From positions 174,476 through 238,475 of IMG/VR virus record IMGVR_UViG_3300043425_001539: a stretch of 64,000 bases of DNA; one strand, given 5' to 3'. The notes beneath the pieces were generated by a model, which was not told where the DNA came from, ran no database searches, and saw only the letters and a program-made list of their open reading frames with translations. A program made the position numbers and the translations under genes. Below are positions 2,968-33,680 of the stretch, piece by piece. The first letter of the stretch is position 1. The number at the start of each line of letters is the position of its first letter.

Positions 2968-3079
2968 TTACTTTGTTTTTTTATACTTCAATTCGGGTAT
3001 TTACAAATATTATATACTACTTTTTCCAAAAGTTCTTAAAATATAAATATTATTTTTACCGATAGTTTTATTTTTTAAA

Positions 3080-5846: not shown

Positions 5847-6218
5847 TTAGTCTTGAGTAAAATCTTCAATCTTGTCATTGAAAGAAGATTGTTGATATGA
5901 AGATAAATTCTTAATTTCATCGCGTTTTCTTGGAGTTAACTCAATTACAGTGTACCCCATTCGGTAATACTTCTTTTCTGCTGCTGTCAAATTTTTATTA
6001 CGGCGTTTTGCAACTTCTTTTAAAGCTTCTTTGTCATTACCTGTTTCCATAACATCGCCCCAAGTTCCTTTAACAAAAATTGGGTATGTTCTTTTAGTGC
6101 CAATTGAACCTCCGTAATAAACCAAAGCAAATTGGTCAGATAAATTTACTTCATTACCTTCGTTGAGAAATTCTTCCGATTCGTTGATAAAATTATCAAA
6201 GTTTTGAATATGTTTCAT
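5847..6218 (-). CDS. Putative internal head protein (tagged)
   Basis: MKHIQNFDNFINE-S followed by a second EEFLNE site. Confidence 0.65.
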   Translation of the reverse strand: MKHIQNFDNFINESEEFLNEGNEVNLSDQFALVYYGGSIGTKRTYPIFVKGTWGDVMETGNDKEALKEVAKRRNKNLTAAEKKYYRMGYTVIELTPRKRDEIKNLSSYQQSSFNDKIEDFTQD

Positions 6219-9267: not shown

Positions 9268-10338
9268 TTATAATCCGTACCTGGATTTAGTGCTATTAAA
9301 TTCTTGTAAAATTGAAGATGTGTCAAGATTACTTGTCCAAATTTTAAAGGCACCCATATACGCATTCATATAGTAAGAATTTCCTCCTATTGCTCCAATC
9401 CACCAGTTTGGGTTATTAACACCTATATTTGCTACAGGTGTTCCTCCACCCGTAGTTGCAATTTCAACTCCATTTTTATAAAATTTAATTGTTTGATTGG
9501 TCCTGTTAAATACATAAGTTATCATTTGCCATGTATTTTCAGTTACGGTATCATTTGCTGTAAATTGTGTTCCGCCAGCCAAACCATTCCCAGCTTCAAA
9601 ATTAAGATTTCTGTTTTGTGTTTGCCACCCATTCCATGATGCTTTAAAACCGTTTGTGTTGGTGTTTGCTGCAGCATTTGACATCAAGCAATTAATGCTA
9701 AACTCTGACCTTGGATATACCCACCCATTAATTGTTATAGTATTTCCAAAATTATATTGACCAAATGATATTTTATCCGCGCCTCCATCAAAATCAAAAA
9801 CGCCGCTTGCAATTCCTGCATTATAAGCTGCGCCTGATATAGTACCGACGGCTCCTGTTACATTTCCTAAAGAACCTATATTATTTAAAACGGTGCCTGA
9901 TCCTGAATATGAAGAAGAAATTCCTGCATCATAATAAAATTGTGCAGTAATTCCTACAGTAGGTGACCAAGATGTCCAAAAATTGTTTAATGTCATCCAA
10001 TCTTTTGCGTCACTTGCAGACGCAAAGGGGCCTGTGCCTGATACTTCGCGAGATAACACATTTGCTAATCCCAAAAAAGAATTATCGGTTTTTTCTACAG
10101 ATCTCCAAAATTGAACATTACCATCGTTACTTCCATCAGCTGTAGGAAAATTTGCGCCTGTGACAGCCAAAGCAACTATATATCCCAAATCTTCATCAGG
10201 ACCAGCAAACCACTTAATACCTCCTGGATTTTTTGAATAATCCACGGTATTATTGCCAATCGCTAAATTTCCTGATTGCGTTGCACCTGTAATTGCAGAC
10301 ATTGAAGGATTATATGAAAAAGGTCTAACTGTTGCCAT
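9268..10338 (-). CDS. LamG/concanavalin A-like domain virion protein
   Basis: FDFDG..D.I, TITINGWVYP, NTWQMITYVF, KFYKNG, IGAIGG..Y.NAYMG LamG signature. Confidence 0.8.
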   Translation of the reverse strand: MATVRPFSYNPSMSAITGATQSGNLAIGNNTVDYSKNPGGIKWFAGPDEDLGYIVALAVTGANFPTADGSNDGNVQFWRSVEKTDNSFLGLANVLSREVSGTGPFASASDAKDWMTLNNFWTSWSPTVGITAQFYYDAGISSSYSGSGTVLNNIGSLGNVTGAVGTISGAAYNAGIASGVFDFDGGADKISFGQYNFGNTITINGWVYPRSEFSINCLMSNAAANTNTNGFKASWNGWQTQNRNLNFEAGNGLAGGTQFTANDTVTENTWQMITYVFNRTNQTIKFYKNGVEIATTGGGTPVANIGVNNPNWWIGAIGGNSYYMNAYMGAFKIWTSNLDTSSILQEFNSTKSRYGL

Positions 10339-10837: not shown

Positions 10838-12670
10838 TTATTTTTTAAATGCCATATATTCCTCAAATTTCATAAATCTTTTTGGAACATTTTTATTTTC
10901 CTTTTTAATATCATCTTCATCATCTTTCTTTTCTTCCTCAGGCGCTTTTTCGTCATCTTTCTTTTCCTCCTCAGGTTTCTTTTCCTCAGGCGCTTTTTCG
11001 TCATCTTTCTTTTCCTCCTCGGGTTTCTTTTTATCTTCTTTATCTTCCTCGGGTTTTTTAACATCTGAAGTTTTTTCCTCAGGCTCTTTTTCTTCGCCAC
11101 CTAAATCTTTCAATTCTTGTATTGCATTTGTGATAGCTTCAGTGTCTTTTTCAGGCTCCAATTTAGGAAATTCTTTAAATGCTTTTGCTTCGTCGGGCAT
11201 TTCTTCATCCTCGCTTTCTATTCCTTTGTTAACCAATTCAACCATACGGTTGCGCAAATTAATTTGGTTTATCTTTGCTTGTTTAATTTTTTGTAAATCA
11301 GTGATTCCTTCGGTTGCAATTTTCTTTTTATCTTCGCCATCATAAGAATTAATACTTTTAAGTATAACACTTTTGATAGTACCTAAAGGGTCTTTTGATT
11401 CAGTTTCTTCGATAATTAAATTAATTGCCTCACTTAATTTAAAATTAATCATTCTGAATGAAGCAAAAGAAATTGATTCACTCATATTTTTTAATTCTTC
11501 TTTATAACCGTCAACCGTTTGTTTTGCTTTTTCTAAAGCATCACTAATTAATTTAGCTTTTTCTTCGTCGCCTGCTTCTTCAGCAGATTTTAACTCTTCT
11601 TCAGCTTTTTTAATTTTTTCTTCAGCTGACTCAATTCTATCTTTAAGTTCTTTGGTTTTTGAATCTTCAGTTTTTTCATCAGAAGATTTGTCAGATGTTT
11701 TATTTTGCTTGTCTTGAATAGCTTTTTCTATATCGACCCACTTTTTGTAAACTTCATTTGCTTTATTTGTGTACTCTGTGTATGCATCTTGCCATTGAGT
11801 AATTCCATACTTATTTAGAGATTCAATTTGTTTATTTGCTTTTTCAAATTGTTCATCAACATTTTCATCAACATTTTCATCATCTTTAACATCAGACAGC
11901 TTATTTTTTAATTCTTCAGATGTTTTTTTATCTCCCGTATCAGTTGCTATTTGAATTGCTTCTTCAAGAACCTCAATGTCAGCATTTCTTTTTGCTTCAG
12001 CAAATTCAAGATCCCATTTTTTCTTAAATGAACTTCCCAATATGTTGGATTGAAGTTCAATAAATTTTTCTTGTTTTTTTTCTATTTTTTCTTTTTCGGT
12101 TGTGTAATTATTTTCTGCCTTTTTCCACGCAACCTCTTTCATGTTTTCAGCTTTTTCCAATTCCTTTTTAGCATTTTCGGTATTACCTTTTGCCGCTGCT
12201 AATTTTTGATCTCGCTGTTTTCTTAACTGCTCTTGTTTTGCTGAGTTCCCTTCAGCTCGTTTAATCATTTCACGGTACTCGTCTTCAATTTGTGTTACAG
12301 CTGATTTATCTTCATCATCAGACGATGATTTGGTTTTTGCTTTAAGCGGCTCAATAACTTCAGTTTTATATTTATGATCAAATACATATTTTGATCTATC
12401 AGCGCTGGAATTTTTATAAGCTTCAATATATGGTTTTAATGAACTTTTTAATGACGTATAAATTGTTCTATTATACACAGACTTTGCAGCCAATAAAGCA
12501 ATGGATAACGTTCCTGCTGCTACTACATTTGCAACCGATTCCAATTCATTTCCTCCACCCCACGAAAATGGACCAATATCTAATCGAGTTGCCTCATCAC
12601 CTGAAAATTCATAAAGATGTTCATTGCTTTCAACAACAGTCTTTCTTTCAAGATAATCTTTAAACTTCAT
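10838..12670 (-). CDS. Large acidic/lysine-rich coiled-coil protein, putative head core or ejection protein
   Basis: Directly downstream of the MCP; MKFKDYLE start; one hydrophobic helix; KKPEEEKKDDEKAPEE repeats near the C-terminus. Confidence 0.5.
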   Translation of the reverse strand: MKFKDYLERKTVVESNEHLYEFSGDEATRLDIGPFSWGGGNELESVANVVAAGTLSIALLAAKSVYNRTIYTSLKSSLKPYIEAYKNSSADRSKYVFDHKYKTEVIEPLKAKTKSSSDDEDKSAVTQIEDEYREMIKRAEGNSAKQEQLRKQRDQKLAAAKGNTENAKKELEKAENMKEVAWKKAENNYTTEKEKIEKKQEKFIELQSNILGSSFKKKWDLEFAEAKRNADIEVLEEAIQIATDTGDKKTSEELKNKLSDVKDDENVDENVDEQFEKANKQIESLNKYGITQWQDAYTEYTNKANEVYKKWVDIEKAIQDKQNKTSDKSSDEKTEDSKTKELKDRIESAEEKIKKAEEELKSAEEAGDEEKAKLISDALEKAKQTVDGYKEELKNMSESISFASFRMINFKLSEAINLIIEETESKDPLGTIKSVILKSINSYDGEDKKKIATEGITDLQKIKQAKINQINLRNRMVELVNKGIESEDEEMPDEAKAFKEFPKLEPEKDTEAITNAIQELKDLGGEEKEPEEKTSDVKKPEEDKEDKKKPEEEKKDDEKAPEEKKPEEEKKDDEKAPEEEKKDDEDDIKKENKNVPKRFMKFEEYMAFKK

Positions 12671-12800
12671 AAACTAAAAAGATTTTTTGTTTATCTATAT
12701 ATCTTTATAGTTAATGAGAATAATGTTCTTAGAATCTTTTTTTCTTTAGGACCAATATGCATATTTGTTTTATACACATTTTAAAAAAAGTTTTATAAGT

Positions 12801-12831
12801 AAAAAAAGAGGGTGGCCATTGGCCACCCTCT
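12801..12831 (-). terminator. Terminator after the major capsid gene
   Basis: AGAGGGTGGCC-AAT-GGCCACCCTCT followed by a T-run. Confidence 0.85.
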
Positions 12832-12852: not shown

Positions 12853-14724
12853 TTAAGCAATAGTTGAAGAAGTAGATACTTGATCCCAGAAAGTACCGTT
12901 AAGATCTTTCAAGTTAATCAAGAATGTGAAGTATTGCGTTTGTGGGTGGAAACCAGCCTCAACAAGTGCATAACGAGATTTAACAGCAATTTTTGGTGCC
13001 ATTGTACCTTCTGCAATTGTTTGGATAGATTCAGCCATCAAGTATGGCATGAACTTAAGACCTGGCTCTTCATCAGCGCCTTTTCTACCAACAAGAATAC
13101 GAGTATCTTCGTACTTCATATTTGGATCAACATAAATCGTCATACCAGCGATCGTTCCCAATGGGTAAAGAGCGCCGTTATTTTGATTTACTGTGTTAGC
13201 CAATGGGTAGAAAGTAAACTGTGCAGAATCCTGAAGTGCTGTTGCAATTTGCAAGTTAGTCACTACAAAGTTACCTGGTCCACGACGGCCGCGTTGTGCA
13301 ACAACGTTTGCCGCAGCAAGAACTTTGGATTGGATTCTTCTTTGGAAAGTACCTTGGTTTTCAAAAGTAGTTGCAGAAGAAGTTCCGTATACTTGAACAT
13401 CTGGGCAAGGAATTGAAACCAATGAGTTTTCTTTACCAATGAAACGAGCATTACCAGTTGATGTTTGGTCAACAAGGGTAAGGTTAAGGTTAACACCGTC
13501 TACATTGTAGAAATCATAGTGGTTCTGCCAGCCAAGTGCAAATGCGCGAGACAAGATGTGTTTGTTGATTGACTGAGAAATCTCATTAACCAACGCATTT
13601 TCCATCATAGAAACAACATCGATACCGTACTGACGGTTAAGATCTTGAATTTGCTCAGTTGTTACAGTTGCAGCAACTTGGTAAGTTTCAGCTTCAACAA
13701 ATTTGGTGAAAGCTTGCAAGCCCATTGTTCTGTACTGAGTAGTTTCACCAACACCACGGCGCATTGGCTCGTAAGGAGTCAAACCGTTGGTTGCATCACC
13801 TGCAAAAGCATCGTTATCAAGAGGACCTGATCCAGCAAATCCTGCAATGTGATCTTCAAGAGCGCGAACCAATTCAGCAGAACCAGTGATATCTCCAGCA
13901 GCACCTACAATTGTCATTCCAGTTGTTGTGTAAGTGGAAGGATTAGTAAGAGCATTTCCAGAGTATGAAGTTGCAGAATACAATGTTGCAGCACCGTCCA
14001 ATACATCAGCAAGAGTAATACCTTGTGTATTTGCAGGAAGAGCATTGAATGTTTGAGCGCCTGTGCTTGTTACAGCAGTTGATTCGCCAAGAATACGGAA
14101 GATTTGCCCGCCGTCGATTCTTGATTTACCTACATAAGCAACAAGAAGTCCGTCGATGCCAGCACCTGCAGCAGCAGCGGTAAATACATAACCGTCACCA
14201 GCATTCGCAGTTGCAAGATCAGCAAGTGCAGTTGCGCCCAAGCCAGAACGAGAAATCTTGAATACCAAGAATTTATCAGTAAATCCTGTGTTGCCAGTCA
14301 AACCGTTTTGACCTTTGATACCAGGAGCATTTACATCACGTCCGCCAGCATATACATAATCAAGATATGTAAGAACACCCGCAGGGCCATTCATAGGAAT
14401 TACAGGAACGATATCGAAGCCAACTGTTCTAGCAGCAACCTGAATTGCCAACGGAAGTAAAGATGGGAATTTATCGCCAGATCCCAATGCATTTGCGCTG
14501 TAGAAGGCACCCGCACCGCCAGCAACTGTAGAAGCTGGAGCAACGTTACCCATACCTGGTGTATTTAAAAGTGATGCTTGTGGGTAAGCAAAACCTTCAT
14601 TGAGTGAATGGTAATGAGCATACTTACTCATCCATGTTAGTTTGTTTGATTCTTTAATACCCGTCTTTTCCTCAAGAATAGGGGCCCAAGTCTCAAACAC
14701 TTGTGATTCATTTAACAAGTTCAT
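12853..14724 (-). CDS. gp23: Major capsid protein, T4 gp23-like
   Basis: VIPMNGPAG, EISQSINKHIL, RRGPGNFVV, FMPY and PKIAVKSRYA motifs; long Ala/Gly/Thr-rich insertion. Confidence 0.9.
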   Translation of the reverse strand: MNLLNESQVFETWAPILEEKTGIKESNKLTWMSKYAHYHSLNEGFAYPQASLLNTPGMGNVAPASTVAGGAGAFYSANALGSGDKFPSLLPLAIQVAARTVGFDIVPVIPMNGPAGVLTYLDYVYAGGRDVNAPGIKGQNGLTGNTGFTDKFLVFKISRSGLGATALADLATANAGDGYVFTAAAAGAGIDGLLVAYVGKSRIDGGQIFRILGESTAVTSTGAQTFNALPANTQGITLADVLDGAATLYSATSYSGNALTNPSTYTTTGMTIVGAAGDITGSAELVRALEDHIAGFAGSGPLDNDAFAGDATNGLTPYEPMRRGVGETTQYRTMGLQAFTKFVEAETYQVAATVTTEQIQDLNRQYGIDVVSMMENALVNEISQSINKHILSRAFALGWQNHYDFYNVDGVNLNLTLVDQTSTGNARFIGKENSLVSIPCPDVQVYGTSSATTFENQGTFQRRIQSKVLAAANVVAQRGRRGPGNFVVTNLQIATALQDSAQFTFYPLANTVNQNNGALYPLGTIAGMTIYVDPNMKYEDTRILVGRKGADEEPGLKFMPYLMAESIQTIAEGTMAPKIAVKSRYALVEAGFHPQTQYFTFLINLKDLNGTFWDQVSTSSTIA

Positions 14725-14745
14725 GTTTTTAGAGATTTGTTTTTT

Positions 14746-16590
14746 TTAACGTTTTACGAATCTGTTCAATCCGTTTGCTACATTCTTAACATAATCATTT
14801 GAGTAGCCAAGAGGATTAATGTCATTCTTAGCAGTCTCAATTCTTTTTGATTCATTAAGACTTTCAACAATGGCTTGATCAGTTTTGCCAAGTCCTCTTG
14901 TCTGCCAGAAGTTATTGATTTGGTATTGAGTTTCCAATCTGTAAAGGTTGGCTTGACGTGTGATGCGGTCTTTAACTTCCGTTGATGCTGCTTCCCAAAC
15001 AGGAAGGTATTCAACAGGCATGTTAGTCAACCACTTTTCGTTAGTTTCAACATTTGCAAGTGCAGATTCCCAAACTTTAACAATTCTTTCTTCGCTGAAA
15101 GAAGGATTAGCGTTGAGAGCGTTGGTGACCCTTTGCTTTTCGGTCTCGTTCAAAGAAAAGAATTCATTTCTTTTGTTCTCTCCTAAGAATTTTACGAATG
15201 GATAACGAGCATCATTAGATTTTTCATCTACCTTTTGTTTTTTGATAGAATCCAATACTGCTTCAATTTTATTATCAAGACTAGCGTATCTGTTTACAAT
15301 ATTTTCTTTGATTGAAGAAGATACCATGTCTCTTTCTTTGTTTTCTGATACATCAAATGATTTTCCATCAGCTGAAGGCATCATATTTTCAAACATATGT
15401 TCTGCATATTCAGTAAGATTTTTAAAGTCTTGTTTGGATGCAACATTTTCAGTTATATATTCTGTGTAACGAATTGCATTATCGGTATGTTCAGCAATAT
15501 ATTCTGCATATGAAAGAGTTTGATTCATTTTCTCTGCAAGATAATTGCCATACTTGATGCTCTCTTCCAATTTTTCAGCTACATATTCATTATAGTTGAT
15601 AGAGCTATTTAATTTTTCTGCAAGATAATTGCTATATTCAAATCCTTTGTCCATTTTTTCAGCAATCATTTCTGAGTACTGAATACCACGATCAGATTTT
15701 TCTGCAACATATTCAGAATATTTAATATTTTGGTCCAGTTTTTCACCAAGATATTCTGAATAAGCTAATGCCTGATTTTGTGTTTCAGACAAATAGTTTG
15801 CGTATTTACGGAGATTATGAATTTCTTCTTGAAGCTTGTCAATTTTTTCATCTTTTTCCGTAATGGTGGAAATAGAGTTTAATCTTTCGTTAATCTTAGC
15901 AATTTCGTCTTTAATAATCAACGAATATTTGTTCATTTCCTCAATGGATACAAATTCATTTTGTGACATATTTTCTTTTATTTTTTCCTTTTGAGTATAT
16001 ATCTCATTAGAATCCATGCTTTCAAAAAAAGCTGGGAACTCATTGGTTACATCATAAATTGCAACTTGATCATTATTGTCAAAACCAAGGCTTTCATTAA
16101 TTTTACTTAAGCGTGCATTTTCAAATCCAGGATCAGCAACAAGATCATACGTAAAAATTCTTTTGATCTGAACTTTTTTGTTTTCACCAACCACACCTGC
16201 TGCTCTTGACGAAATGCTAATAGGAACACCCGTGTCAACTAAATTTTTAGCAATTTGTCCACTTGGTGTATCAAGAAGCTTAATTCTTCCTACAATTTGT
16301 CTTTTCTTTGCATCATATTTAATATCTTCAATCAAGTGACTTACTTTTGATAAAGAAATATCAAATTTATCTGGGTGATCCAATTCTCCCAAAAGACGAT
16401 TTTCAGAAATCTTCTTTTTTAAATAATCCAGGTGAGGAAGATATTCTTTTTCTTCATATATACGATTATTATTATTCTCTACTCCAAATTGTGCAAAAAC
16501 ACCTTCAAGAACATAATCGTCATTTTTTTTACTTACTGAAAGATTTTCACCAGATCTTTCAAGTATCATTAAGTATTGCTTGTTACTCAT
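14746..16590 (-). CDS. gp21: Prohead protease (T4 gp21-like) fused to a coiled-coil scaffold/core domain
   Basis: N.N.RIY, LGELDHP, ISSRAAG and TYDLVADPGF protease motifs; YxEYxAEK 14-aa repeats in the C-terminal half; immediately upstream of the MCP. Confidence 0.88.
   Translation of the reverse strand: MSNKQYLMILERSGENLSVSKKNDDYVLEGVFAQFGVENNNNRIYEEKEYLPHLDYLKKKISENRLLGELDHPDKFDISLSKVSHLIEDIKYDAKKRQIVGRIKLLDTPSGQIAKNLVDTGVPISISSRAAGVVGENKKVQIKRIFTYDLVADPGFENARLSKINESLGFDNNDQVAIYDVTNEFPAFFESMDSNEIYTQKEKIKENMSQNEFVSIEEMNKYSLIIKDEIAKINERLNSISTITEKDEKIDKLQEEIHNLRKYANYLSETQNQALAYSEYLGEKLDQNIKYSEYVAEKSDRGIQYSEMIAEKMDKGFEYSNYLAEKLNSSINYNEYVAEKLEESIKYGNYLAEKMNQTLSYAEYIAEHTDNAIRYTEYITENVASKQDFKNLTEYAEHMFENMMPSADGKSFDVSENKERDMVSSSIKENIVNRYASLDNKIEAVLDSIKKQKVDEKSNDARYPFVKFLGENKRNEFFSLNETEKQRVTNALNANPSFSEERIVKVWESALANVETNEKWLTNMPVEYLPVWEAASTEVKDRITRQANLYRLETQYQINNFWQTRGLGKTDQAIVESLNESKRIETAKNDINPLGYSNDYVKNVANGLNRFVKR
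15996..16003 (-). promoter_or_regulatory. Late-promoter motif internal to the protease gene
   Basis: GATATATA followed by an A-rich leader and an in-frame ATG at 15969. Confidence 0.5.
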
Positions 16591-16701
16591 TTCTTTTTTA
16601 TATTTTTGTCTTAACAAATGACGTAATTTTAAAAATTAAACAAATTGCTGAATGTTTAATTTATGTATATATCATACACATTTTCATAAAAAAATAATTC
16701 T

Positions 16702-17346
16702 TTATTTTCTTAATATTACACGTATAACTACTGGGTTTCTATCCCCGAAAGGTGATAAATTGTTGGATTGTATTACATATTCTGGAACAAAACCTATTTC
16801 TTTAACTCTTCTTAAAAAATCTTCCAAAATATTAAATCTACGGTAATGTCCGTCAAATATCCACTCATTTTTACTTATCATTTGTCCTTGTCCACAAAGT
16901 TCATCATAATTTGATCTTGTCTCAACAAAAAATAACCCTCCATCCTCAATTAAATCGTATATGGATTTAATTGTCCTATATTCACTTACATCATCCACAC
17001 TATGTAAAGAAAATCTTGAATATGCAACATCAAATGTTTCTTTTATTTCAAGACGAGTAAAATCCGCAACAAAGTAATTAACCCGAGTATTTTTTTCTTT
17101 TAATTTATTAATTGAAACTTCTGAAAGATCACACGCGTAAACTTCATTTTTTAAAGCTAAATGTTCAGCGTCTCTGCCATTACCGCATCCAATTTCAAGA
17201 ATTTTGTATTTCTTGTCCTTATTTTCAGAATTTAATATTTGTTGTGTAAAAAGAGCAAAGTTTGATGGATTGGATATTTCAGGAGCGTTTTGCTTTTTTT
17301 CATAATATTCATTCCAATATTTATTATCTTTAATATGTGCTATCAT
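16702..17346 (-). CDS. Class I SAM-dependent methyltransferase
   Basis: ILEIGCGNGRDA; FDVAYSRFSLH. Confidence 0.85.
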   Translation of the reverse strand: MIAHIKDNKYWNEYYEKKQNAPEISNPSNFALFTQQILNSENKDKKYKILEIGCGNGRDAEHLALKNEVYACDLSEVSINKLKEKNTRVNYFVADFTRLEIKETFDVAYSRFSLHSVDDVSEYRTIKSIYDLIEDGGLFFVETRSNYDELCGQGQMISKNEWIFDGHYRRFNILEDFLRRVKEIGFVPEYVIQSNNLSPFGDRNPVVIRVILRK

Positions 17347-18065
17347 TTTCTTATTTCCTTTTCTTTGTTTTTAAAATTATAATAATAATGCCCGTCCAAA
17401 TCTAGCAAACACCAGGGTTTATTTTTTCGATAGTCAAATGTAGGATCAGGAACATTCCACTCTTTTCCGTATAACTGTTCCAAATAACTTTCTACATCAG
17501 AAGGTATTTTAAATTTAACACCTTTGAATTGCATGGTATCAAGTTTTTGTATATACTTACTCTTTGTTCTGATGTACTGTTCGCGCCCGCCATATTTAAA
17601 CATATGATAATCTTCATGCGGAAAATATAAAAATATGTCACATGAAATTTCAATATCTTTAAATTTAACAACTTTATTGTTTTTCTTTAATACAAATTTA
17701 AGATTTCTTGATTTAACAAATTCATCATTTTCCAAATGATTTAATATATCTTCAGTATCATAAAACATTCTGTTTGGTACCGATAGTCTATCTTGTAAAT
17801 CTTGTATCAATTTAGGTGTTATGTCTTCAGCTAAAATACCAACATCACAATCACTGTCGCCGTCAATAAGAGCTTTATCTCGGTAAATACCAAGAAGAGT
17901 TCCACAATCAACCCAAAACTTGGCATTGTGTTTGTTAAAGATGGCAATTAAATCTTGTAAATTTTGAAATTGTAAATCCTTTAATTTTTGATAATCATCT
18001 TTGGACCAGCTATCTTTGCTGATATTTGCCTCGTTTAACCAATCTGTGTAATTTTTAATATTCAT
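17343..18065 (-). CDS. LicD-family nucleotidyl/phosphotransferase (tagged)
   Basis: WVDCGTLLGIYRD..GDSDCDV; IPSD..YL..YG..W..P; N-terminus MNIKNYTDWLNE-A. Confidence 0.82.
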   Translation of the reverse strand: MNIKNYTDWLNEANISKDSWSKDDYQKLKDLQFQNLQDLIAIFNKHNAKFWVDCGTLLGIYRDKALIDGDSDCDVGILAEDITPKLIQDLQDRLSVPNRMFYDTEDILNHLENDEFVKSRNLKFVLKKNNKVVKFKDIEISCDIFLYFPHEDYHMFKYGGREQYIRTKSKYIQKLDTMQFKGVKFKIPSDVESYLEQLYGKEWNVPDPTFDYRKNKPWCLLDLDGHYYYNFKNKEKEIRK

Positions 18066-23727: not shown

Positions 23728-23739
23728 AGTTTATATATC

Positions 23740-24687: not shown

Positions 24688-27600
24688 TCATACTTTTAAG
24701 AATTTCTCAATTCCTTGAATAACCATATCGGGCGTAATTGATGTTGAGCATTCAAACATTCTTGAAGTATTTTTGTGATCAGGACACCAATTCCAATCTC
24801 CTGCATCAAGACGATATCTGTTAAAACAGCTGTTACATTTTTCAGGATTAAAAATTCTCACAACATCATCACCTATAAATTCGGTTTTAGGATCGCTGAA
24901 CCCAGATATTAAAACTACTGGTGTACCTGCAGCCCAAGCAAGCCAGCTTAATCCTGAACCCATACCTATATAAAATTCGGCATGTCTTAAATCATTAATC
25001 CTATCGGCAAAATCATAATCACCTGTTTTATCAATAATACCTGTAGGTGGAAGATTGCCCATAAATTCACCTGATTCTTTGGAGATCAAGACAACCTGAT
25101 AACCTAAGTTTTTGAGATAGTCAACTATTCTTTGCCAGCCCCCTGGGTAATTCCAATATTTTGCTTGGGCGGTTGAATGTATTCCTATACAAACGTATTT
25201 CCCTTGAATGCTTCTTTCTTGTTGCGGCGCATAAACTTTTGGTCTAACTTGTTTGTACTCCAGCCCTAAAATATCTGCGGCAGTTTTTTGCATTTCTTGA
25301 TCTCTAAAATCATTGGGATGTTTAATCTCACTAAATTTATCACTGTCGCCGTCATAGAACCATCCAATATTATATTGAGCAATAATGTTATGAACACTTA
25401 CACCTCGTTCAACAAATTCCAATTCTGGATATTGCCCAACAAATAGTTCGTTGTGAAAAGTCGAGACAATTACTTTGCAATCATGTTTTTTTCTAAATTC
25501 ATCAGCATATCCAATCCAAGCAAGAGTATCACCCAAAGAAGACGAATCAAAGCAAATAAATACTCTTTGATTTTTTAAGTTAATTCTTTGATCATATATT
25601 ACTTGTCCGTTTGATATGTCAGTGATCATAATTCTCCAATCCGTATACCACTCTCGGCTTGCTTTTGTCCAACAATTATTTTCAATCGTTGATGAATAAA
25701 TAACCTTTTCAGTTTTCTGATCAATAAATTTGACTAGGTATTTTCCAGGTATCTGATCTTTAATTTCAACAAACGGTCCATTAATATTATGTACTATAAT
25801 TTTTCGAGTAATGTTGGAAATATTTTGAAAATCATTAATATCCAACACTTGAATTACGTCCCAGTTCTTTACCACAATATCTCCCATTTTGGATAATTTG
25901 CCAATAAACCTTGATTGTTCAAAAGAAGGTAATTGTATTTCAATTCCAATGTAAGGAAAATTCAAAAACCGGCCAATTGCAAAGTGTTTAACTTCTTTTC
26001 CTATATTAAACGAAAAGAATTTATTTCCTGCTTTAAGCCTAACTTTAATTTCATAATCAGTTGTTCCAAAAAACGATAAAATAAATTTCTGAGTTGACTT
26101 TTCTTGTGTTATCGCATAATGCAATTTGTCTTTACCTAAATTAAAAAAAGAATGCGTTTGCAAGGATTCAGTATCTTTGATTATTTCTGCAGTATCAAGA
26201 GGAGGTAACACACATAAATCAACATTTTCTTTTTGCATAAGATTACTCATAAACTCTTCAAATAAAACTCCGTAATTATAGTAATCATTAATCGAATTAA
26301 TTTTATTAAACACTTTTTTAAGTTTGCGAGTTTTCACACTAAAAAAGCCCCAATCGTTTCCCTTTGCCGATTCTGCTTGATATGTTATACAACCTATGCC
26401 ATCCATTGTTCTTAACGCTTTAGAATGACTCTGTATGACTTCCATATTTTGGATGTAATAATCATAATTCATAAAATGAACAACATCGTGCCCTTTAGAG
26501 AGTGCAAAGTCCAAACCGTTTTTAACCAAAGAAAAAATTGCTGGCCCGTAATTGACTTGATATGGCATTATAATACTCACCAAATCATCAGAGTACTTAT
26601 ACACAGGAACGGGATAATTTAACGTTGCAGCGGTTTCTTGTGTTATTACAAAATTATTTGAATCAATAATTGTAAAGTTAGCAGGCGATTCTTCGTTAAT
26701 GTGAGTTGACAAAACAGTTGTGTAACCTTCCTTTTTAAGATGATTGACAAGGTCAACCATTTTCATCTTTTTCACAAGTGTATCTGCGTGCGACAGGACG
26801 ACCACACATTCACCTAGTTGCTTAATATTAACAGGTGATAATTTTTCATTTATAAATGATAAACCTTGCTTAACTGCGTTTTCCCAGGTAAATTGCTCTC
26901 TTAAGGCATATGAATCTTGAACTGCTTTTGCTTTTAGAACTGAATAATTTTCATATGCATAACGCATTTTCCGGGCAAAGTCTCTATAATTAGGTTGTGC
27001 ATAATATCCTGGAATTTCAGTTCCCGCTCTTGCCTGAACATTATATGTGTCACCGCTTAAACATTCAACTAGTCCCACAGTTTCAACAGGAATACCTCTC
27101 CCCGCAGCAAATTCCAATTGAGCGCCGTAATCAGTATATAAAGCGGGAGTGCCTGCAGCCATTGCTTCAATCAAAGGAATATTCCAACCTTCCGATCTTG
27201 CACATGTTAACATTACATGTCCATTCTTGATATACTTGATGTAGTCTTGTCGGCTGACAAAATGTTTAACCTTGATCCTTTCGTCAATAAATCCATAATG
27301 TTCCAGTCTTTCTTCGGTACTATTCATCCCATCAACTGAATATGGATTATCCACGCTAATAATCAGGTCAACTGGCTCGTCTTTGTTAAATTCTTTTAAA
27401 AATGCCGCAATCATTTCAGGAATAGATTTTCTAAAATCCCATCGTCCAAAAATATTAAACTTGAAACGCCCATATTGATATTCGTCAAAATCAGGATCAA
27501 ACGAATCGGGAAAAAAATCTGCGTCCACTGCTTCATTGACCACATGAATACGTGAAATAGGATATCCTTGTTCAGATAAAACTTGTTTATGCCATTCCGT

Positions 27601-28044
27601 AACAACCCAAACAAAATCAAAGTTATTGATTAGTTGTTCTACAAAATAATCAGGCAATCTTGTGCTTTCCCAAACCGTATATGCAATCTTGAGGCGCGAA
27701 TCAAACTTTTCATAAAAGTAATGGTGATTCATATCCATCAAGACAATGTCCACGTCGGGTTGAAACTTGTCTTTAGGTGTAGTAAATTGGAAATCTTTAA
27801 AATGCGAATGTTCATCAATTGGAAAATCCGCATACTTATCTGGGCCAGTTGTAAGCGTGATTGTTTCCAGGATACTTAAATCGGTTTCATTGAGATAACT
27901 GGGGTTTTCGTCCCAAGTGTAATTCCTAACTCGTAAATTTACATGTTTTGAGAGTTCTCTGAAAAATCCACGGGCATGTGCATTATAGCCTGTCTTGCCT
28001 AAATAACAAGTGTGTGCTCTTACATTAATTGCGTTCTTATTCAT
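24688..28044 (-). CDS. Multidomain glycosyltransferase: GT4 domain plus TibC/Aah-like (GT9-type) heptosyltransferase domain
   Basis: RWDFRK and SEGWNIPLIEAMAAG (GT4); SLGDTLAW, TAQAKYWN, GMGSGLSWLAWA and CNSC..C..C in the C-terminal part. Confidence 0.82.
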   Translation of the reverse strand: MNKNAINVRAHTCYLGKTGYNAHARGFFRELSKHVNLRVRNYTWDENPSYLNETDLSILETITLTTGPDKYADFPIDEHSHFKDFQFTTPKDKFQPDVDIVLMDMNHHYFYEKFDSRLKIAYTVWESTRLPDYFVEQLINNFDFVWVVTEWHKQVLSEQGYPISRIHVVNEAVDADFFPDSFDPDFDEYQYGRFKFNIFGRWDFRKSIPEMIAAFLKEFNKDEPVDLIISVDNPYSVDGMNSTEERLEHYGFIDERIKVKHFVSRQDYIKYIKNGHVMLTCARSEGWNIPLIEAMAAGTPALYTDYGAQLEFAAGRGIPVETVGLVECLSGDTYNVQARAGTEIPGYYAQPNYRDFARKMRYAYENYSVLKAKAVQDSYALREQFTWENAVKQGLSFINEKLSPVNIKQLGECVVVLSHADTLVKKMKMVDLVNHLKKEGYTTVLSTHINEESPANFTIIDSNNFVITQETAATLNYPVPVYKYSDDLVSIIMPYQVNYGPAIFSLVKNGLDFALSKGHDVVHFMNYDYYIQNMEVIQSHSKALRTMDGIGCITYQAESAKGNDWGFFSVKTRKLKKVFNKINSINDYYNYGVLFEEFMSNLMQKENVDLCVLPPLDTAEIIKDTESLQTHSFFNLGKDKLHYAITQEKSTQKFILSFFGTTDYEIKVRLKAGNKFFSFNIGKEVKHFAIGRFLNFPYIGIEIQLPSFEQSRFIGKLSKMGDIVVKNWDVIQVLDINDFQNISNITRKIIVHNINGPFVEIKDQIPGKYLVKFIDQKTEKVIYSSTIENNCWTKASREWYTDWRIMITDISNGQVIYDQRINLKNQRVFICFDSSSLGDTLAWIGYADEFRKKHDCKVIVSTFHNELFVGQYPELEFVERGVSVHNIIAQYNIGWFYDGDSDKFSEIKHPNDFRDQEMQKTAADILGLEYKQVRPKVYAPQQERSIQGKYVCIGIHSTAQAKYWNYPGGWQRIVDYLKNLGYQVVLISKESGEFMGNLPPTGIIDKTGDYDFADRINDLRHAEFYIGMGSGLSWLAWAAGTPVVLISGFSDPKTEFIGDDVVRIFNPEKCNSCFNRYRLDAGDWNWCPDHKNTSRMFECSTSITPDMVIQGIEKFLKV

Positions 28045-29565: not shown

Positions 29566-30515
29566 TGTATTAAATTGTTTTCAAATATAATATCCGCAAT
29601 CTTTCTTGACGCTCGTGTATCACTGGGATAATGAATTGCCGTTATCTCGCGACTGCGTGCAATCTTTTCCCCCAAGGCCTTGAGTTCATCCTGAAGCGCA
29701 GGATATTTTTGCGCATAATATCGACTCATAACCAATCCTGTAAGTGCATGTCCACTGGGATATGAAGCCGTCATTGCATCAGTTTGAATCAAGGGATAAA
29801 TAGGCATGTTATAGCATTTTGCCAATTGGTAAGGACGAGGACGATTAATCACGTCTTTCAGAAAGAACAGCAGACTATCGGTTTGACTGTCAATTCTAAA
29901 AAAGTCTCCCATACTCTCATCATACCCACCGGCTTTCAATAAGTCAATAAATGTTTGTGCCAAATTGCTTACATCATCAACGTAGCGCGCAAAAGTAATC
30001 TCATCAGCCGTCACTTCACTACAGAATTGTAACAATTCTTCCAAATCCGCGCGTGTTTCTCCGCTTGAATTGCGAGGCGCCTCGGCCCGCAACTTGTCAA
30101 CCCAACCCTGCGCAATAAACCAGTTTTTAATCCGGTCGTGGGTATGTTCTGCAATCTCTTGAAACTCTTGAGTCTGATTCCCGTAAACTACTCGATCCAC
30201 ATCCCAATTGTCAACATCAGTCAACTCCGCTTCGGCCAACAAGTCTTTCCGTCCCAATTGCCGATAAACCTCTTTCCGTGTCTTTTCCATTTTTTCTGCG
30301 TATTCCGGGTCTTCATTCCTGTTAAAAACAATTTGTTGCGTTAGACTTCCGCTGATCTTTTTGAGATCACTCTTGCGTGTTTTGATTAGCCAGGCAGCCA
30401 AATCCCGGATACTCAAATCCCGAAATCTTCCCTCTGCCTCAGGCGCATCACTGTCTCTCCATTTGGGACGTTTGGCTTCAGACAACCATTCTTGAAAACT
30501 TTTCATATCAATCAA
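29562..30515 (-). CDS. PAP2/vanadium-haloperoxidase-like phosphatase (tagged)
   Basis: K....RPRP, SYPSGH and SR....HYPSD motifs; N-terminus MKSFQEWLSE-A. Confidence 0.82.
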   Translation of the reverse strand: MIDMKSFQEWLSEAKRPKWRDSDAPEAEGRFRDLSIRDLAAWLIKTRKSDLKKISGSLTQQIVFNRNEDPEYAEKMEKTRKEVYRQLGRKDLLAEAELTDVDNWDVDRVVYGNQTQEFQEIAEHTHDRIKNWFIAQGWVDKLRAEAPRNSSGETRADLEELLQFCSEVTADEITFARYVDDVSNLAQTFIDLLKAGGYDESMGDFFRIDSQTDSLLFFLKDVINRPRPYQLAKCYNMPIYPLIQTDAMTASYPSGHALTGLVMSRYYAQKYPALQDELKALGEKIARSREITAIHYPSDTRASRKIADIIFENNLIQ

Positions 30516-31302
30516 TTTTTGTAATTGTGGTAATCACGCTGGGCACAGCTGGTCTAACCGGACCTGTCCGACTGGCAATGGCTTCCAATTTAACATTACT
30601 GGTATCAGGTGACCAAACCAAGCTAACTGTGTCCCCTGCATTAAGAGCCACTTGATAGTTAATAACAAACAAATCACGAGTGCCGTTGCCATTAAGTGAA
30701 AGATCAGTTGACGAATAAGCCACATCCAAACCATTGATTCGCAACCAAAAAGTTGCCGCCGCGCTTCCTCCCGCAGTATGAACCACCTGTATACTACTCA
30801 AAATAAGATATATGCCATCAACCCCAATCTCAATCTCTTGTCCATCCAGGCTGAGACTTACGCCAGTTGCCTGATCAACAAGATCATGACTAATCACCTG
30901 TGCCACATCTTCAACGCCCAATTGTTGAACCGTTGACAAGAAAGACCCATACGCAGCAATTCCACTACTACCACTTGAACCACTACTACCACTTGAACCA
31001 CTACTACCACTTGAGGGAAAAGTCTCAACCACTTCAGTAATTGCATGTATAGGAACAACATGAGCAGAGCCCAATACCTGAATCCAACCCTCAGAAGACC
31101 TCGTTGCCCGATTACATAAATAGGCACTAGCAGCAAAAAAACTAGTAGCGTCCGTAGAGAATTGTTGATCCTGTCCAGTTAATAATAGATCAGTACGAAA
31201 AGGAACTTGTGTTTCATCAAGAATCCAATAATACTCTTGATCCTGATAATAACCACTGGTAGGATCATATCCATAACCGCGAATGATTTTGGGTAACAAC
31301 AT
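30508..31302 (-). CDS. Virion fibre-like protein with SSG linker and C1q/BclA-like C-terminal domain
   Basis: (SSG)n linker, then YGSF..Q, G.Y.I..SIQ, WLR.NG.DV..S and LNAGD.V.L.W. Confidence 0.65.
   Translation of the reverse strand: MLLPKIIRGYGYDPTSGYYQDQEYYWILDETQVPFRTDLLLTGQDQQFSTDATSFFAASAYLCNRATRSSEGWIQVLGSAHVVPIHAITEVVETFPSSGSSGSSGSSGSSGSSGIAAYGSFLSTVQQLGVEDVAQVISHDLVDQATGVSLSLDGQEIEIGVDGIYLILSSIQVVHTAGGSAAATFWLRINGLDVAYSSTDLSLNGNGTRDLFVINYQVALNAGDTVSLVWSPDTSNVKLEAIASRTGPVRPAVPSVITTITKID
30962..31013. repeat. 18-bp-period tandem repeat encoding the (SSG)n linker
   Basis: ccactactaccacttgaa, about 3 copies. Confidence 0.85.
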
Positions 31303-31653
31303 AACAAACTATATATCAACAATGGAAACAATATAACAGTAGAACCAACACTCCCAGTGCTGGCGGAAGGCCTGATCATGGGAATTGACCAGTGGATAAA
31401 TGTACTCGTTTTAATAAGTACAAATCACTCTAAAGAGTCTTGAAGACAACCAAAAAATTAAAAATGTACTCTAAATGATTGCCATTGATTGGACTATGAA
31501 AAGCGTGTAGTGGGAAGATTTTAGACGTTAGAAGTGAAATACGGCAAGGCTCTTTGTGTGTGATTTCTTCCGTGTTGGAAAGTATATTTTTCGCAGAGAT
31601 TTCTGCCCATTCTACCCAAATTACGTCTATTGGAGATATCGGAAGTGATTTTG

Positions 31654-31725
31654 TGGTACTGACTGGAATCGAACCAGTGCTACTGGTTCTTCAGACCAGC
31701 GCTCTACCAACTGAGCTACAATACC
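31654..31725 (-). tRNA. tRNA-Phe(GAA)
   Basis: GGTATTG/CAGTACC acceptor; CTGGT-CTGAAGA-ACCAG anticodon arm; TTCGATT T-loop. Confidence 0.9.
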
Positions 31726-31734
31726 AAATAATTG

Positions 31735-31819
31735 CGGATGGGGAGAGATTCGAACTCTCGGTACCTTTCAGTACGACGGTTTTCAAGACCGCTCCATTAA
31801 ACCACTCTGGCACCCATCC
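31735..31819 (-). tRNA. tRNA-Ser(TGA)
   Basis: GGATGGG/CCCATCC acceptor; GCGGT-CTTGAAA-ACCGT; long variable arm. Confidence 0.9.
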
Positions 31820-31934
31820 GTATAGACTATATATTCCTTATTCAAGGGCAAGCATTACGGCCACTTGCCCTGATGGGTCTGGCCTAACCCAATAACTCTT
31901 CGCCACTGTATGGCGGTTTTCTTAACAACTTAAA

Positions 31935-32300
31935 CTAACGAGACAACCATTTTTCCCGATGTACCGCCTTCCAAGCGCGTAGTGCCCGCGACACATACCT
32001 GGATTCTGAGAGACCGTTTTCTTCACGCTCTCGACGGGTCTGGCGGTAGAAAGAAATTCGGGCGGATTCCATCACGTCTTCCTTGGCTTTAAGATAGTCA
32101 GGATAACGACGTTCCAATTCGAGTTCTTCCAACTCTTCTTCGCGATTTTGGGAAGATTTCAGTTGTGCTTCAAATGAATGGTCGGGTTTAACCCGCATGG
32201 TACCTGTTACCCCGGTACCTCCACGTTCAATTAGACGGATCATTTTGTCCATTGCTCTATCAGATTTTGAGCTGCCAACAATACCTTTACCTTTTCCCAT
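31935..32300 (-). CDS. Hypothetical basic protein
   Basis: 121-aa ORF. Confidence 0.55.
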   Translation of the reverse strand: MGKGKGIVGSSKSDRAMDKMIRLIERGGTGVTGTMRVKPDHSFEAQLKSSQNREEELEELELERRYPDYLKAKEDVMESARISFYRQTRREREENGLSESRYVSRALRAWKAVHREKWLSR

Positions 32301-32357
32301 GGTTGTTAATGTTTAAGAAGTTAAGAAGTTAAAAAAATCAAGAATAGTTATAAACTG

Positions 32358-33665: not shown

Positions 33666-33680
33666 AAGACAGTAATAGGT

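What the first reader, a model, noticed from the sequence alone, without database searches (positions are those of the whole stretch)
14746..16590. Protease-scaffold fusion with a hidden internal late promoter and start: nested scaffold gene
Seen: a gp21-like protease domain is fused in frame to a coiled-coil region with YxEYxAEK 14-aa repeats. At the domain boundary the late motif GATATATA (15996-16003) is followed by an A-rich leader and an in-frame ATG at 15969 (MSQNEF). Established: T4 encodes gp21 and gp22 separately, whereas lambda nests scaffold Nu3 in the protease gene C. Inference: a T4-type phage using a lambda-like nested arrangement, with its own promoter to overproduce scaffold.
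Basis: partly seen in the sequence, partly recalled or inferred. Interest (0 to 1): 0.6.

Follow-up and report, generated by a model that had tools for sequence, protein, structure and literature searches.

The report
Scaffold gene nested in phage protease gene
In this large freshwater phage the head-maturation protease and the head scaffold are one reading frame, and conserved signals inside it (a late-type promoter motif and a start codon) indicate that the scaffold is also made on its own, as in herpesviruses; this is shown by comparison only, not by experiment.

Summary
Window 14746-16590 (minus strand) is one 614-aa ORF. It has a T4 gp21-type protease domain, a disordered linker, eight 14-aa repeats and a helical C-terminal domain, and sits directly upstream of a gp23-like capsid gene.

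GATATATA at 15996-16003 lies 26 nt before the in-frame ATG at 15969. Genome-wide, this 8-mer occurs 32 times on the coding strand and 2 times on the other. Of the 32, 25 are intergenic, although only 7.9% of the genome is intergenic, and most lie 20-28 nt before a start codon. The genome encodes a gp55-like late sigma factor.

All 44 compared proteins (window plus 43 relatives) keep the fusion and a Met at this linker position. In two separate clades the motif is the most synonymously conserved spot of the whole gene. The ATG context ranks 7th of 1,013 internal in-frame ATGs.

T4 has TATAAATA 27 nt before gene 22, at the end of gene 21. The window has the same layout without the stop codon.

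The most likely mechanism is a nested scaffold gene (407 aa) with its own late promoter, which would also raise capsid-gene transcription. No transcription start or N-terminus was measured. This is a new variant of a known kind (lambda C/Nu3, Mu I/Z, herpes UL26/UL26.5, HFTV1 gp17/17.5).

The parts
16666..16673 (-). GATATATA late-type promoter motif upstream of the whole operon, 75 nt before the ATG at 16590
   Evidence: Relatives carry the same motif 16-35 nt (some 75-107 nt) before their protease start.
14746..16590 (-). Full-length protease-scaffold ORF, 614 aa (P0001)
   Evidence: The fusion is present in all 43 relatives.
16093..16590 (-). gp21-type (Peptidase S77, assemblin-fold) protease domain, aa 1-166, with catalytic His72 and Ser127/128
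   Evidence: H72, S127 and S128 invariant; pLDDT about 80
16090..16101 (-). I-N-E|S (aa 164-167), candidate self-cleavage site that would release the protease domain. It matches the T4 protease rule L/I-x-E.
   Evidence: [LIVM]xE is present in 44 of 44 sequences. The cleavage rule is from PMC9026906. Cleavage here is inferred.
15970..16092 (-). Variable linker between protease and scaffold, aa 167-207; residues 194-220 (extending into the scaffold N-terminus) are predicted disordered
   Evidence: pLDDT below 50 for residues 194-220
15996..16005 (-). Internal late-type promoter motif GAGATATATA, embedded in codons E-I-Y-T
   Evidence: GAGATAWATA is invariant in the 7 closest genomes while the flanks vary.
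15981..15987 (-). Conserved GAAAAAA block between the motif and the ATG; likely the start of the transcript or the A-rich leader
   Evidence: Third-position identity is 0.86 against a gene mean of 0.45.
15967..15969 (-). In-frame ATG (Met208), the proposed start of the nested scaffold protein
   Evidence: A Met is present in all 44 sequences at variable spacing. Start-context score ranks 7th of 1,013 internal ATGs.
14746..15969 (-). Nested scaffold ORF, 407 aa, about 45 kDa
   Evidence: inferred product
15430..15771 (-). Eight 14-aa repeats (xxxYxEYxAEKxxx, aa 274-387) in long helices. Each repeat contains an (L/I/V)-x-E protease-type site.
14887..15213 (-). Conserved helical C-terminal domain (aa 460-568, includes the invariant YQxNNFWxT block); candidate capsid-binding part
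   Evidence: pLDDT about 80; function inferred
14848..14859 (-). L-N-E|S (aa 578-581) in a disordered stretch; candidate cleavage site that would free the last 34 residues
   Evidence: Present in 38 of 44 sequences; pLDDT below 50 for residues 569-592; cleavage inferred.
12853..14724 (-). gp23-like major capsid protein gene, 21 nt after the scaffold stop, with no promoter motif of its own
   Evidence: (PF07068, E 3e-38)
12807..12831 (-). Intrinsic terminator (11-bp stem, 8 G-C pairs, T run) that closes the protease-scaffold-capsid operon

Best explanation
The gene is a protease-scaffold fusion that also contains a nested, in-frame scaffold gene with its own late-class promoter.

Proposed transcripts and products:
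- Transcripts from the upstream promoter (16673) encode the full 614-aa protein. Its scaffold part would carry the gp21-type protease into the prohead core.
- The internal GATATATA (16003-15996) is read by host RNA polymerase carrying the phage gp55-like sigma. It starts a second, shorter transcript a few bases downstream, near 15990.
- On that transcript the first ATG (15969), behind an A-rich leader without a Shine-Dalgarno sequence, as is usual for Bacteroidota, starts a 407-aa scaffold-only protein.
- The same transcript runs on into the capsid gene and ends at the terminator at 12831-12807. Scaffold and capsid protein would therefore be made in excess over protease. T4 proheads hold 72 gp21, 576 gp22 and 930 gp23.

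After assembly the protease would cut at (L/I/V)-x-E sites: I-N-E|S after the protease domain, one site in every 14-aa repeat, and L-N-E|S near the C-terminus. This would clear the core.

Shown: the sequence features, their statistics and their conservation. Inferred: promoter activity, the transcription start, use of the ATG, the cleavage sites and the stoichiometry.
For: 1. The motif behaves as a promoter.
- Genome-wide there are 32 copies on the coding strand and 2 on the other.
- 25 of the 32 are intergenic, although only 7.9% of the genome is intergenic. Most lie 20-28 nt before an ATG, and the internal copy lies 26 nt before its ATG.
- It is among the top intergenic 8-mers. It is distinct from a second class, TTGTATATTTG, which is the host-type early promoter.
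- A gp55-like late sigma is encoded: phrog_234, E 1.6e-13.
- Genes behind the motif include a baseplate wedge subunit, head closure Hc2 and this head gene.

2. The internal copy is conserved as nucleotides, not as amino acids.
- In the window clade (7 sequences, 60-100% aa identity), the 4-codon windows at aa 195-203 have third-position identity of 0.76-0.86 (the top ones 0.86), against a gene mean of 0.45. Their amino-acid identity is only 0.44-0.69. The Tyr-to-Asn change keeps GATAAATA.
- In a second clade (12 sequences) the motif sits about 20 codons further upstream, in K-I-Y-R codons. It is the top-ranked of 648 windows, at 0.96 against 0.49.
- In the relatives' loci that carry the motif in this gene (both clades above), the linker copy is its only occurrence inside the protease-scaffold ORF; the other copies lie close upstream of gene starts.

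3. The Met is conserved as a start codon would be.
- It is present in all 44 sequences, down to 33% identity, at variable spacing (2-6 residues) before the conserved FVT block and inside an otherwise variable linker.
- Its start-context score is 5.53. That ranks 7th of 1,013 internal in-frame ATGs and falls at the 62nd percentile of real starts.
- Most lineages have an A-rich leader: 0.60-0.70 A against 0.38 for the gene.
- Met208 lies in a predicted disordered linker, 8 residues before the first long helix.

4. Layout.
- The relatives' gene order is portal, fusion, capsid, with no separate scaffold gene.
- T4 has TATAAATA overlapping the gene 21 stop, 27 nt before the gene 22 ATG.
- The capsid gene has no promoter of its own, and the terminator follows it.

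5. Precedent.
- Nested protease/scaffold genes: lambda and HSV-1 (named in 10.64898/2026.09.13.751334), HFTV1 (same preprint), Mu (PMC4378225) and OsHV-1 (PMC11565193, where the scaffold transcript is 10-fold more abundant).
- T4 gene 17 has internal transcription with in-frame translation.

6. Weak support from RNA.
- Contigs from a freshwater metatranscriptome cover 13172-15689 only. None lies in 15902-17000.
Against: - No transcription start site, ribosome footprint or protein N-terminus is available.
- The RNA evidence is six low-depth contigs. If they fell at random over the stretch, all six would lie downstream of 16000 about 19% of the time. DNA carry-over in the library cannot be excluded.
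- Three close relatives have GATAAATA at the site. In this genome that variant is intergenic in only 3 of 22 copies, so it may be weak there.
- In the L015-L034 subclade the motif is about 65 nt from the Met and the leader is not A-rich, 0.45.
- Several more distant relatives (L002, L028, L029, L035-L045) keep the Met but show no recognisable motif.
- The 'late' timing of the motif is inferred from the sigma homologue and from the genes it precedes, not measured.
- The scaffold role of the C-terminal 407 aa rests on position, composition and analogy. It shows no similarity to T4 gp22 (E 0.79) and has no family match.
Confidence: 0.72

Rival explanations
1. The internal motif is a working promoter, but its purpose is to drive the capsid gene downstream. 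The scaffold part is made only as part of the full-length fusion, and Met208 is not used as a start.
For: The capsid gene lies 21 nt after the fusion's stop and has no motif of its own. The terminator comes only after it. T4 also places a late promoter inside gene 22 ahead of gene 23.
Against: A transcript starting near 15990 would carry the ATG at 15969 as its first start codon, in a good context. The Met is kept in all 44 sequences, including those that lack the motif. A promoter meant only for the capsid gene could sit anywhere in 1.2 kb, yet it stays in the linker in two clades.
Confidence: 0.1
2. The scaffold-only protein is made from Met208 by internal translation initiation on the full-length mRNA, as in lambda C/Nu3 and Mu I/Z. 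GATATATA in the linker is then not a promoter but some other conserved nucleotide signal.
For: The Met is more widely conserved than the motif. A-rich unstructured leaders are enough for initiation in Bacteroidota, which mostly lack Shine-Dalgarno sequences (PMC9723584). Lambda, Mu and HFTV1 work this way.
Against: Elsewhere the same 8-mer is almost exclusively intergenic and lies upstream of genes. It is the most synonymously constrained site of the gene in two clades. T4 has a late promoter at the equivalent place. The two mechanisms can also operate together.
Confidence: 0.1
3. Only the single fusion polypeptide is made, as with P2 gpO. It scaffolds first and then cuts itself. The motif and the Met are kept for protein-level reasons or by chance.
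For: P2 gpO works without a nested product (described in 10.64898/2026.09.13.751334). The fusion has a universally conserved I-N-E|S site that could release the protease from the scaffold after assembly.
Against: Third-codon-position conservation cannot be explained at the protein level. The motif sits in different amino-acid contexts in the two clades (EIY/EIN against KIY/RIY). The variable spacing of the Met fits a start codon, not a structural residue. A 1:1 ratio of protease to scaffold differs greatly from T4's 72:576.
Confidence: 0.06

Closest known systems
Herpesvirus UL26 / UL26.5 (HSV-1, BoHV-1, MDV; also the OsHV-1 capsid protease/scaffold)
   Same: An N-terminal assemblin-fold serine protease, a linker and a scaffold in one ORF. 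A shorter in-frame gene with its own transcript gives scaffold alone in about 10-fold excess (PMC11565193). The protease fold is shared: the model here hits T4 gp21 first and then the pseudorabies, HCMV and VZV proteases. Candidate cleavage sites lie after the protease domain and near the C-terminus.
   Different: Here the virus is bacterial, the promoter is of the gp55 type, and the nested transcript also carries the capsid gene. Sequence similarity is limited to the fold. The internal transcript is predicted, not observed.
Phage lambda C / Nu3 and phage Mu I / Z
   Same: The scaffold is nested in frame in the 3' part of the protease gene, directly upstream of the head genes.
   Different: Those phages use internal translation initiation on the same mRNA, with a Shine-Dalgarno sequence. 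They have no dedicated internal promoter, and their proteases belong to other families, not S77/gp21.
Phage T4 genes 21 (protease) and 22 (scaffold)
   Same: A homologous protease (Pfam S77, PDB 5jbl). The gene order is protease, scaffold, capsid. A late promoter 8-mer lies at the end of the protease part, 27 nt (T4) or 26 nt (here) before the scaffold ATG. A gp55-type sigma is present. The L/I-x-E cleavage logic applies, with a scaffold that is cut into many pieces.
   Different: T4 has a stop codon between the two genes, so no fusion protein is made. The promoter consensus is TATAAATA rather than GATATATA. No sequence similarity is detectable between the scaffold part and gp22.
Haloferax tailed virus HFTV1 gp17 / gp17.5
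   Same: A protease-scaffold ORF annotated as a single fusion was shown by ribosome profiling to contain an in-frame internal start that gives about 8-fold more of the C-terminal part (10.64898/2026.09.13.751334).
   Different: That virus is archaeal, regulation is post-transcriptional with no internal promoter, and the protease is unrelated in sequence.
Phage P2 gpO
   Same: Protease and scaffold are made as one polypeptide that cuts itself.
   Different: No nested product is known for gpO. Here a conserved internal start and promoter argue for one.

Membership tests
Peptidase S77 (T4 gp21 prohead protease; assemblin-fold clan) | Profile match above the curated threshold | tested here: met
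   PF03420 scores 47 bits against a cut-off of 27, at aa 25-138. phrog_207, E 7e-42.
Peptidase S77 (T4 gp21 prohead protease; assemblin-fold clan) | Catalytic His and Ser conserved | tested here: met
   His72 (GELDHP) and Ser127/128 (ISSRAAG) align with the catalytic positions of 5jbl. They are invariant in 30 sequences.
Peptidase S77 (T4 gp21 prohead protease; assemblin-fold clan) | Fold like T4 gp21 and herpesvirus proteases | tested here: met
   The model (domain pLDDT about 80) matches 5jbl with E 5e-9 and TM 0.70. The pseudorabies, HCMV and VZV proteases follow with probability up to 0.93.
Nested protease/scaffold gene pairs (lambda C/Nu3, Mu I/Z, HSV UL26/UL26.5, HFTV1 gp17/17.5) | Protease domain and scaffold-like helical region in one ORF next to the capsid gene | tested here: met
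Nested protease/scaffold gene pairs (lambda C/Nu3, Mu I/Z, HSV UL26/UL26.5, HFTV1 gp17/17.5) | In-frame internal start codon at the domain boundary that yields scaffold alone | tested here: inconclusive
   The codon is present, conserved in 44 of 44 sequences and in a start-like context. Its use in translation cannot be shown with these tools.
Nested protease/scaffold gene pairs (lambda C/Nu3, Mu I/Z, HSV UL26/UL26.5, HFTV1 gp17/17.5) | Scaffold product in excess over the full-length protease | not testable with these tools
   The only hint is that RNA contigs cover the scaffold and capsid parts and not the protease part, at low depth.
Herpes-type subclass: nested gene with its own promoter | A separate transcript that starts inside the protease ORF | tested here: inconclusive
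   The promoter motif is present and under synonymous constraint in two clades. No 5' end has been mapped.
T4-type late promoters (gp55-dependent, single -10-like 8-mer) | Phage-encoded gp55-family sigma | tested here: met
   G000:C1:27473-27817(-), phrog_234 'late sigma transcription factor', E 1.6e-13. The direct match to T4 gp55 is weak, E 0.002.
T4-type late promoters (gp55-dependent, single -10-like 8-mer) | An A/T 8-mer enriched upstream of late genes, on the coding strand | tested here: met
   32 copies against 2 by strand; 25 of 32 intergenic; found ahead of baseplate, head-closure and head genes.
T4-type late promoters (gp55-dependent, single -10-like 8-mer) | Consensus TATAAATA | tested here: not met
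   The consensus here is GATATATA. TATAAATA is not enriched on the coding strand (28 against 36) and is intergenic in only 9 of 28 copies. The promoter therefore works like a T4 late promoter but has a different sequence.
T4 gp22 scaffold family | Sequence similarity to gp22 | tested here: not met
   BLASTP E 0.79. No Pfam or PHROG scaffold family matches. The Atlas feature search returned nothing usable.

The most novel reading that the evidence does not exclude
The herpesvirus way of expressing the capsid-maturation module may not be an animal-virus invention. That module is an assemblin-fold protease fused to the scaffold, with a promoter-driven, in-frame scaffold gene nested inside. It may be an ancient state of the gp21/assemblin lineage that survives in a whole clade of jumbo and huge Bacteroidota phages. 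T4's separate genes 21 and 22 would then be a split version that kept the promoter and the start codon in place.
Probability: 0.25. Interest if true: 0.7.

Novelty: new variant of a known kind. Interest (0 to 1): 0.5.

Why it matters
- Annotation: in Lak phages, the 462-735 kb 'huge phages' and the freshwater Bacteroidota jumbo phages compared here, none of the loci examined shows a separate scaffold gene between portal and capsid, and the ORF is read as a single product (for example 'prohead core scaffolding and protease' in PMC9723584). This finding locates the scaffold and predicts a second product.
- Evolution: it gives a phage counterpart, with a homologous protease, to the herpesvirus UL26/UL26.5 arrangement. 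It adds to recent evidence (OsHV-1, HFTV1) that nested protease/scaffold expression runs through the whole realm Duplodnaviria.
- Transcription: it defines a candidate late-promoter consensus (GATATATA) for an uncultured phage group. It also offers a clear example of a promoter kept inside coding sequence by synonymous-site selection.
- Testability: all of this can be tested with raw-read metatranscriptomes or with a cultured relative.

Tried and rejected
- Tandem Repeats Finder on the DNA found nothing. The 14-aa repeats are visible only at protein level.
- A megablast of the region against GenBank phages found no match.
- The sigma-70 consensus scan gave 18 sites against 15.6 expected. It is uninformative, and the host uses another promoter type.
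- Similarity of the scaffold part to T4 gp22 and to the separate coiled-coil gene of Erwinia phage Kaldavass was only low-complexity noise. These cannot be used as homology evidence.
- The ESM Atlas feature search on aa 208-614 returned no usable hit.
- Metatranscriptome: one run, kept as contigs only. It cannot show 5' ends or relative levels. The absence of contigs over the protease part is suggestive but not significant.
- TATAAATA and GATAAATA as the genome's late motif: rejected, because both are mostly genic.
- The bS21 gene typical of some freshwater Bacteroidota jumbo phages is absent from this record.
- The large protein searches (search for homologous proteins, the search of protein representatives) were not run. 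IMG/VR loci already gave 39 relatives with DNA.
- AlphaFold confidence for the coiled-coil part is low (pLDDT 30-50), so no fold claim is made for it.
Full report
**What is there**

On the minus strand, 16590 to 14746 is a single 614-aa ORF. The ATG at 16590, not the upstream TTG at 16617, matches the N-termini of relatives.

- Residues 25-138 match Pfam Peptidase_S77 at 47 bits against a cut-off of 27. The N-terminal part (best stretch aa 18-217) matches phrog_207, head maturation protease, with E 7e-42.
- The solved T4 gp21 structure (5jbl) matches with E 5e-6. His72 and Ser127/128 align to the catalytic positions and are invariant in a 30-sequence alignment.
- An AlphaFold model built on that alignment gives a confident protease domain (pLDDT about 80). 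It also shows a low-confidence stretch at 194-220, long helices at 216-403, a confident helical domain at about 460-568, a disordered stretch at 569-592 and a terminal helix.
- Foldseek places the model on T4 gp21 (E 5e-9, TM 0.70) and then on herpesvirus proteases.
- Residues 274-387 are eight repeats in exact 14-aa register. Self-identity is 0.38 at lag 14 and 0.13 or less at other lags. Nothing is repeated at DNA level.
- The next gene, 21 nt downstream, is a gp23-like capsid protein (PF07068, E 3e-38). It is followed by a strong intrinsic terminator at 12831-12807.

**The genome**

The window is the last 64 kb of a 238-kb IMG/VR virus record estimated to be 84% complete. The genome is 32% G+C, and 286 of 303 crude gene calls are on one strand.

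The closest GenBank relatives of the protein are uncultured 'huge phages' of 462-735 kb (LR756500-LR756504, LR745206) and the Lak phages of Prevotella. T4-like phages and cyanophages match only the protease domain.

Three observations point to a Bacteroidota host:
- Gene starts have A-rich, G-poor leaders without a Shine-Dalgarno sequence.
- A second intergenic motif class ends in TTGTATATTTG. From my own knowledge this resembles the Bacteroidota -33/-7 promoter type.
- The only sequencing run that holds the stretch is a freshwater metatranscriptome. Freshwater Bacteroidota jumbo phages with a gene annotated 'prohead core scaffolding and protease' have been described, but without mention of a nested gene or of promoters (PMC9723584).

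**Is GATATATA a real signal?**

- In the window it occurs 10 times, all on the coding strand, against 2.8 expected.
- Genome-wide it occurs 32 times on the coding strand and 2 on the other.
- 25 of the 32 lie in the 7.9% of the genome that is intergenic, most of them 20-28 nt before an ATG.
- It is among the most enriched intergenic 8-mers. It is distinct from the repeated TTGTATATTTG element, which clusters before small genes at window 19-60 kb.
- The genome encodes a gp55-family late sigma (phrog_234, E 1.6e-13).
- Genes behind the motif include a baseplate wedge subunit, head closure Hc2 and this head gene.

I therefore read the motif as the -10-like element of a gp55-type late promoter. 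It works like T4's TATAAATA but differs in sequence, and TATAAATA itself is not enriched here. The late timing is inferred.

**The internal copy**

GATATATA at 16003-15996 is one of only about four truly genic copies in the genome. It lies 26 nt before the in-frame ATG at 15969, which is the modal spacing for this motif. I compared the gene with 39 IMG/VR loci and six GenBank loci.

All of them have the fusion. The relatives' gene order is portal, fusion, capsid, with no separate scaffold gene.

*The Met.* In the protein alignment the linker is highly variable. Even so, every one of the 44 sequences, down to 33% identity, has a Met 2-6 residues before the conserved FVT..MNxYS block. The variable spacing and the variable neighbouring residues fit a start codon better than a structural residue.

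*The window clade.* In the seven closest genomes (60-100% aa identity), GAGATAWATA is invariant while the flanking codons change freely.
- The 4-codon windows at aa 195-203 have third-position identity of 0.76-0.86, the top ones 0.86, against a gene mean of 0.45.
- Their amino-acid identity is only 0.44-0.69.
- Apart from one gap-affected window, they are the highest in the whole gene.
- A second conserved nucleotide block, GAAAAAA (15987-15981), lies where the transcript would begin.

*The second clade.* In 12 sequences the motif sits about 20 codons further upstream, in K-I-Y-R codons. It is the top-ranked of 648 windows, at 0.96 against 0.49.

*The relatives' loci.* In the loci that carry the motif in this gene, the linker copy is its only occurrence inside the protease-scaffold ORF. 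The other copies lie close upstream of gene starts, typically before the protease start and after the capsid gene.

A promoter-like element kept by synonymous selection at two different linker positions in two clades is hard to explain at the protein level.

**The start codon**

I built a position-weight model from 285 gene starts (-22 to +9).
- The ATG at 15969 scores 5.53.
- It ranks 7th of 1,013 internal in-frame ATGs and falls at the 62nd percentile of real starts.
- The 20 nt before the Met are A-rich in most lineages, 0.60-0.70 against 0.38 for the gene. This does not hold in the L015-L034 subclade, at 0.45.

**Comparison with T4**

In T4, TATAAATA overlaps the stop codon of gene 21 and ends 27 nt before the gene 22 ATG. 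The window has the same layout of protease, late 8-mer, 26 nt and scaffold ATG, but with no stop codon, so the protease reading frame runs on.

T4 also has precedents for nested in-frame products: internal transcription and translation in gene 17, and a second start in gene 21 (PMC9026906).

Erwinia jumbo phage Kaldavass has separate protease and coiled-coil genes, with TATAAATA in the 72-nt spacer between them.

**Mechanism proposed**

- The upstream promoter (16673) gives full-length protease-scaffold, which enters the core through its scaffold part.
- The internal promoter gives a shorter mRNA whose first ATG starts a 407-aa scaffold. That mRNA continues into the capsid gene as far as the terminator.
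- This raises scaffold and capsid protein over protease. T4 proheads hold 72 gp21, 576 gp22 and 930 gp23 (PMC9026906).

Candidate cleavage sites follow the T4 rule L/I-x-E:
- I-N-E|S at aa 164-167, present in 44 of 44 sequences.
- One (L/I/V)-x-E in each repeat.
- L-N-E|S at aa 578-581, present in 38 of 44 sequences and lying in a disordered stretch.

These steps are inferred.

**RNA evidence**

One freshwater metatranscriptome, kept as contigs, holds six near-identical pieces. All lie between 13172 and 15689, in the capsid gene and the scaffold part. None lies in 15902-17000. This points the right way, but the depth is low and contigs cannot show transcript ends. If the pieces fell at random, the pattern would arise about one time in five.

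**What is known, and novelty**

Nested scaffold genes inside protease genes are established in several viruses:
- lambda (C/Nu3) and HSV-1 (UL26/UL26.5), both cited in 10.64898/2026.09.13.751334;
- Mu (I/Z; PMC4378225);
- OsHV-1 (PMC11565193);
- the archaeal virus HFTV1 (10.64898/2026.09.13.751334).

The bacterial and archaeal cases use internal translation on one mRNA. The herpesvirus cases use a separate transcript. The case here is a phage with a homologue of the herpesvirus protease fold and, apparently, a dedicated internal promoter.

My literature searches found no description of this for gp21-type proteases or for huge phages. The library lacks most subscription journals, however.

I rate it a new variant of a known kind.

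**Limits**

- Nothing was measured directly.
- Three close relatives carry GATAAATA at the site, and that variant is rarely intergenic in this genome.
- Some distant relatives keep the Met but have no recognisable motif.
- The scaffold function is assigned by position, composition and analogy, not by homology.

Noticed in passing
window about 19100-60000, minus strand (for example 19132, 29589-35936, 37874-42731, 52267-59876): About 20 near-identical copies of a roughly 70-nt element, an A-run followed by GTTGCCCAAAAATTTT and ending in TTGTATATTTGTATATAA. Each lies 20-35 nt before a small ORF. It looks like a repeated strong early promoter of the Bacteroidota -33/-7 type and marks an early-gene cluster.
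   Followed up: partly
window 12807-12831 (-): A strong intrinsic terminator (11-bp stem, 8 G-C pairs, T run) right after the capsid gene. The next GATATATA follows at 12696-12703, ahead of the 610-aa gene at 10838-12670.
   Followed up: partly
window 31310-31317 with ATG 31302; 23732-23739 with ATG 23727; also three sites outside the window: In several genes GATATATA ends only 4-7 nt before the ATG. If transcription starts about 6 nt downstream, as at T4 late promoters, these mRNAs would be leaderless or nearly so.
   Followed up: no
window 10177-10184 (-), inside ORF 9268-10338: A second genic GATATATA with no ATG close behind it. It could be another internal promoter or a chance copy.
   Followed up: no
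G000:C1:27473-27817 (-), outside the window (L048:1444-1788): A 114-aa gp55-like late sigma factor (phrog_234, E 1.6e-13), immediately upstream of a head-closure gene (phrog_218).
   Followed up: partly
window 15430-15771 (-), aa 274-387: Each of the eight 14-aa repeats contains (L/I/V)-A/G/T-E, matching the T4 protease cleavage rule. The scaffold may be built to be cut into peptides of about 14 residues.
   Followed up: partly
window 31653-31819, 38444-38516, 60883-60965, 62128-62201 (-): Five tRNA genes: Phe-GAA, Ser-TGA, Lys-TTT, Leu-TAA and Arg-TCT. All read A/T-ending codons, which suits a 32% G+C phage.
   Followed up: no
L051 (T4) 6083-6090; L049 (Erwinia phage Kaldavass) about 3048-3056: T4's TATAAATA overlaps the gene 21 stop codon, 27 nt before gene 22. 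Kaldavass has TATAAATA in the 72-nt spacer between its separate protease and coiled-coil genes, which are in the same reading frame.
   Followed up: partly
window 16702-18065 (-): A SAM-dependent methyltransferase gene (16702-17346) and a 240-aa gene with its own GATATATA lie directly upstream of the protease. In the relatives (L001, L003, L005) the portal gene occupies this position. The head module is therefore rearranged here.
   Followed up: no
window 24688-28044 (-): A 1,118-aa protein with a glycosyltransferase domain at aa 86-397 (phrog_2170, E 2e-29).
   Followed up: no
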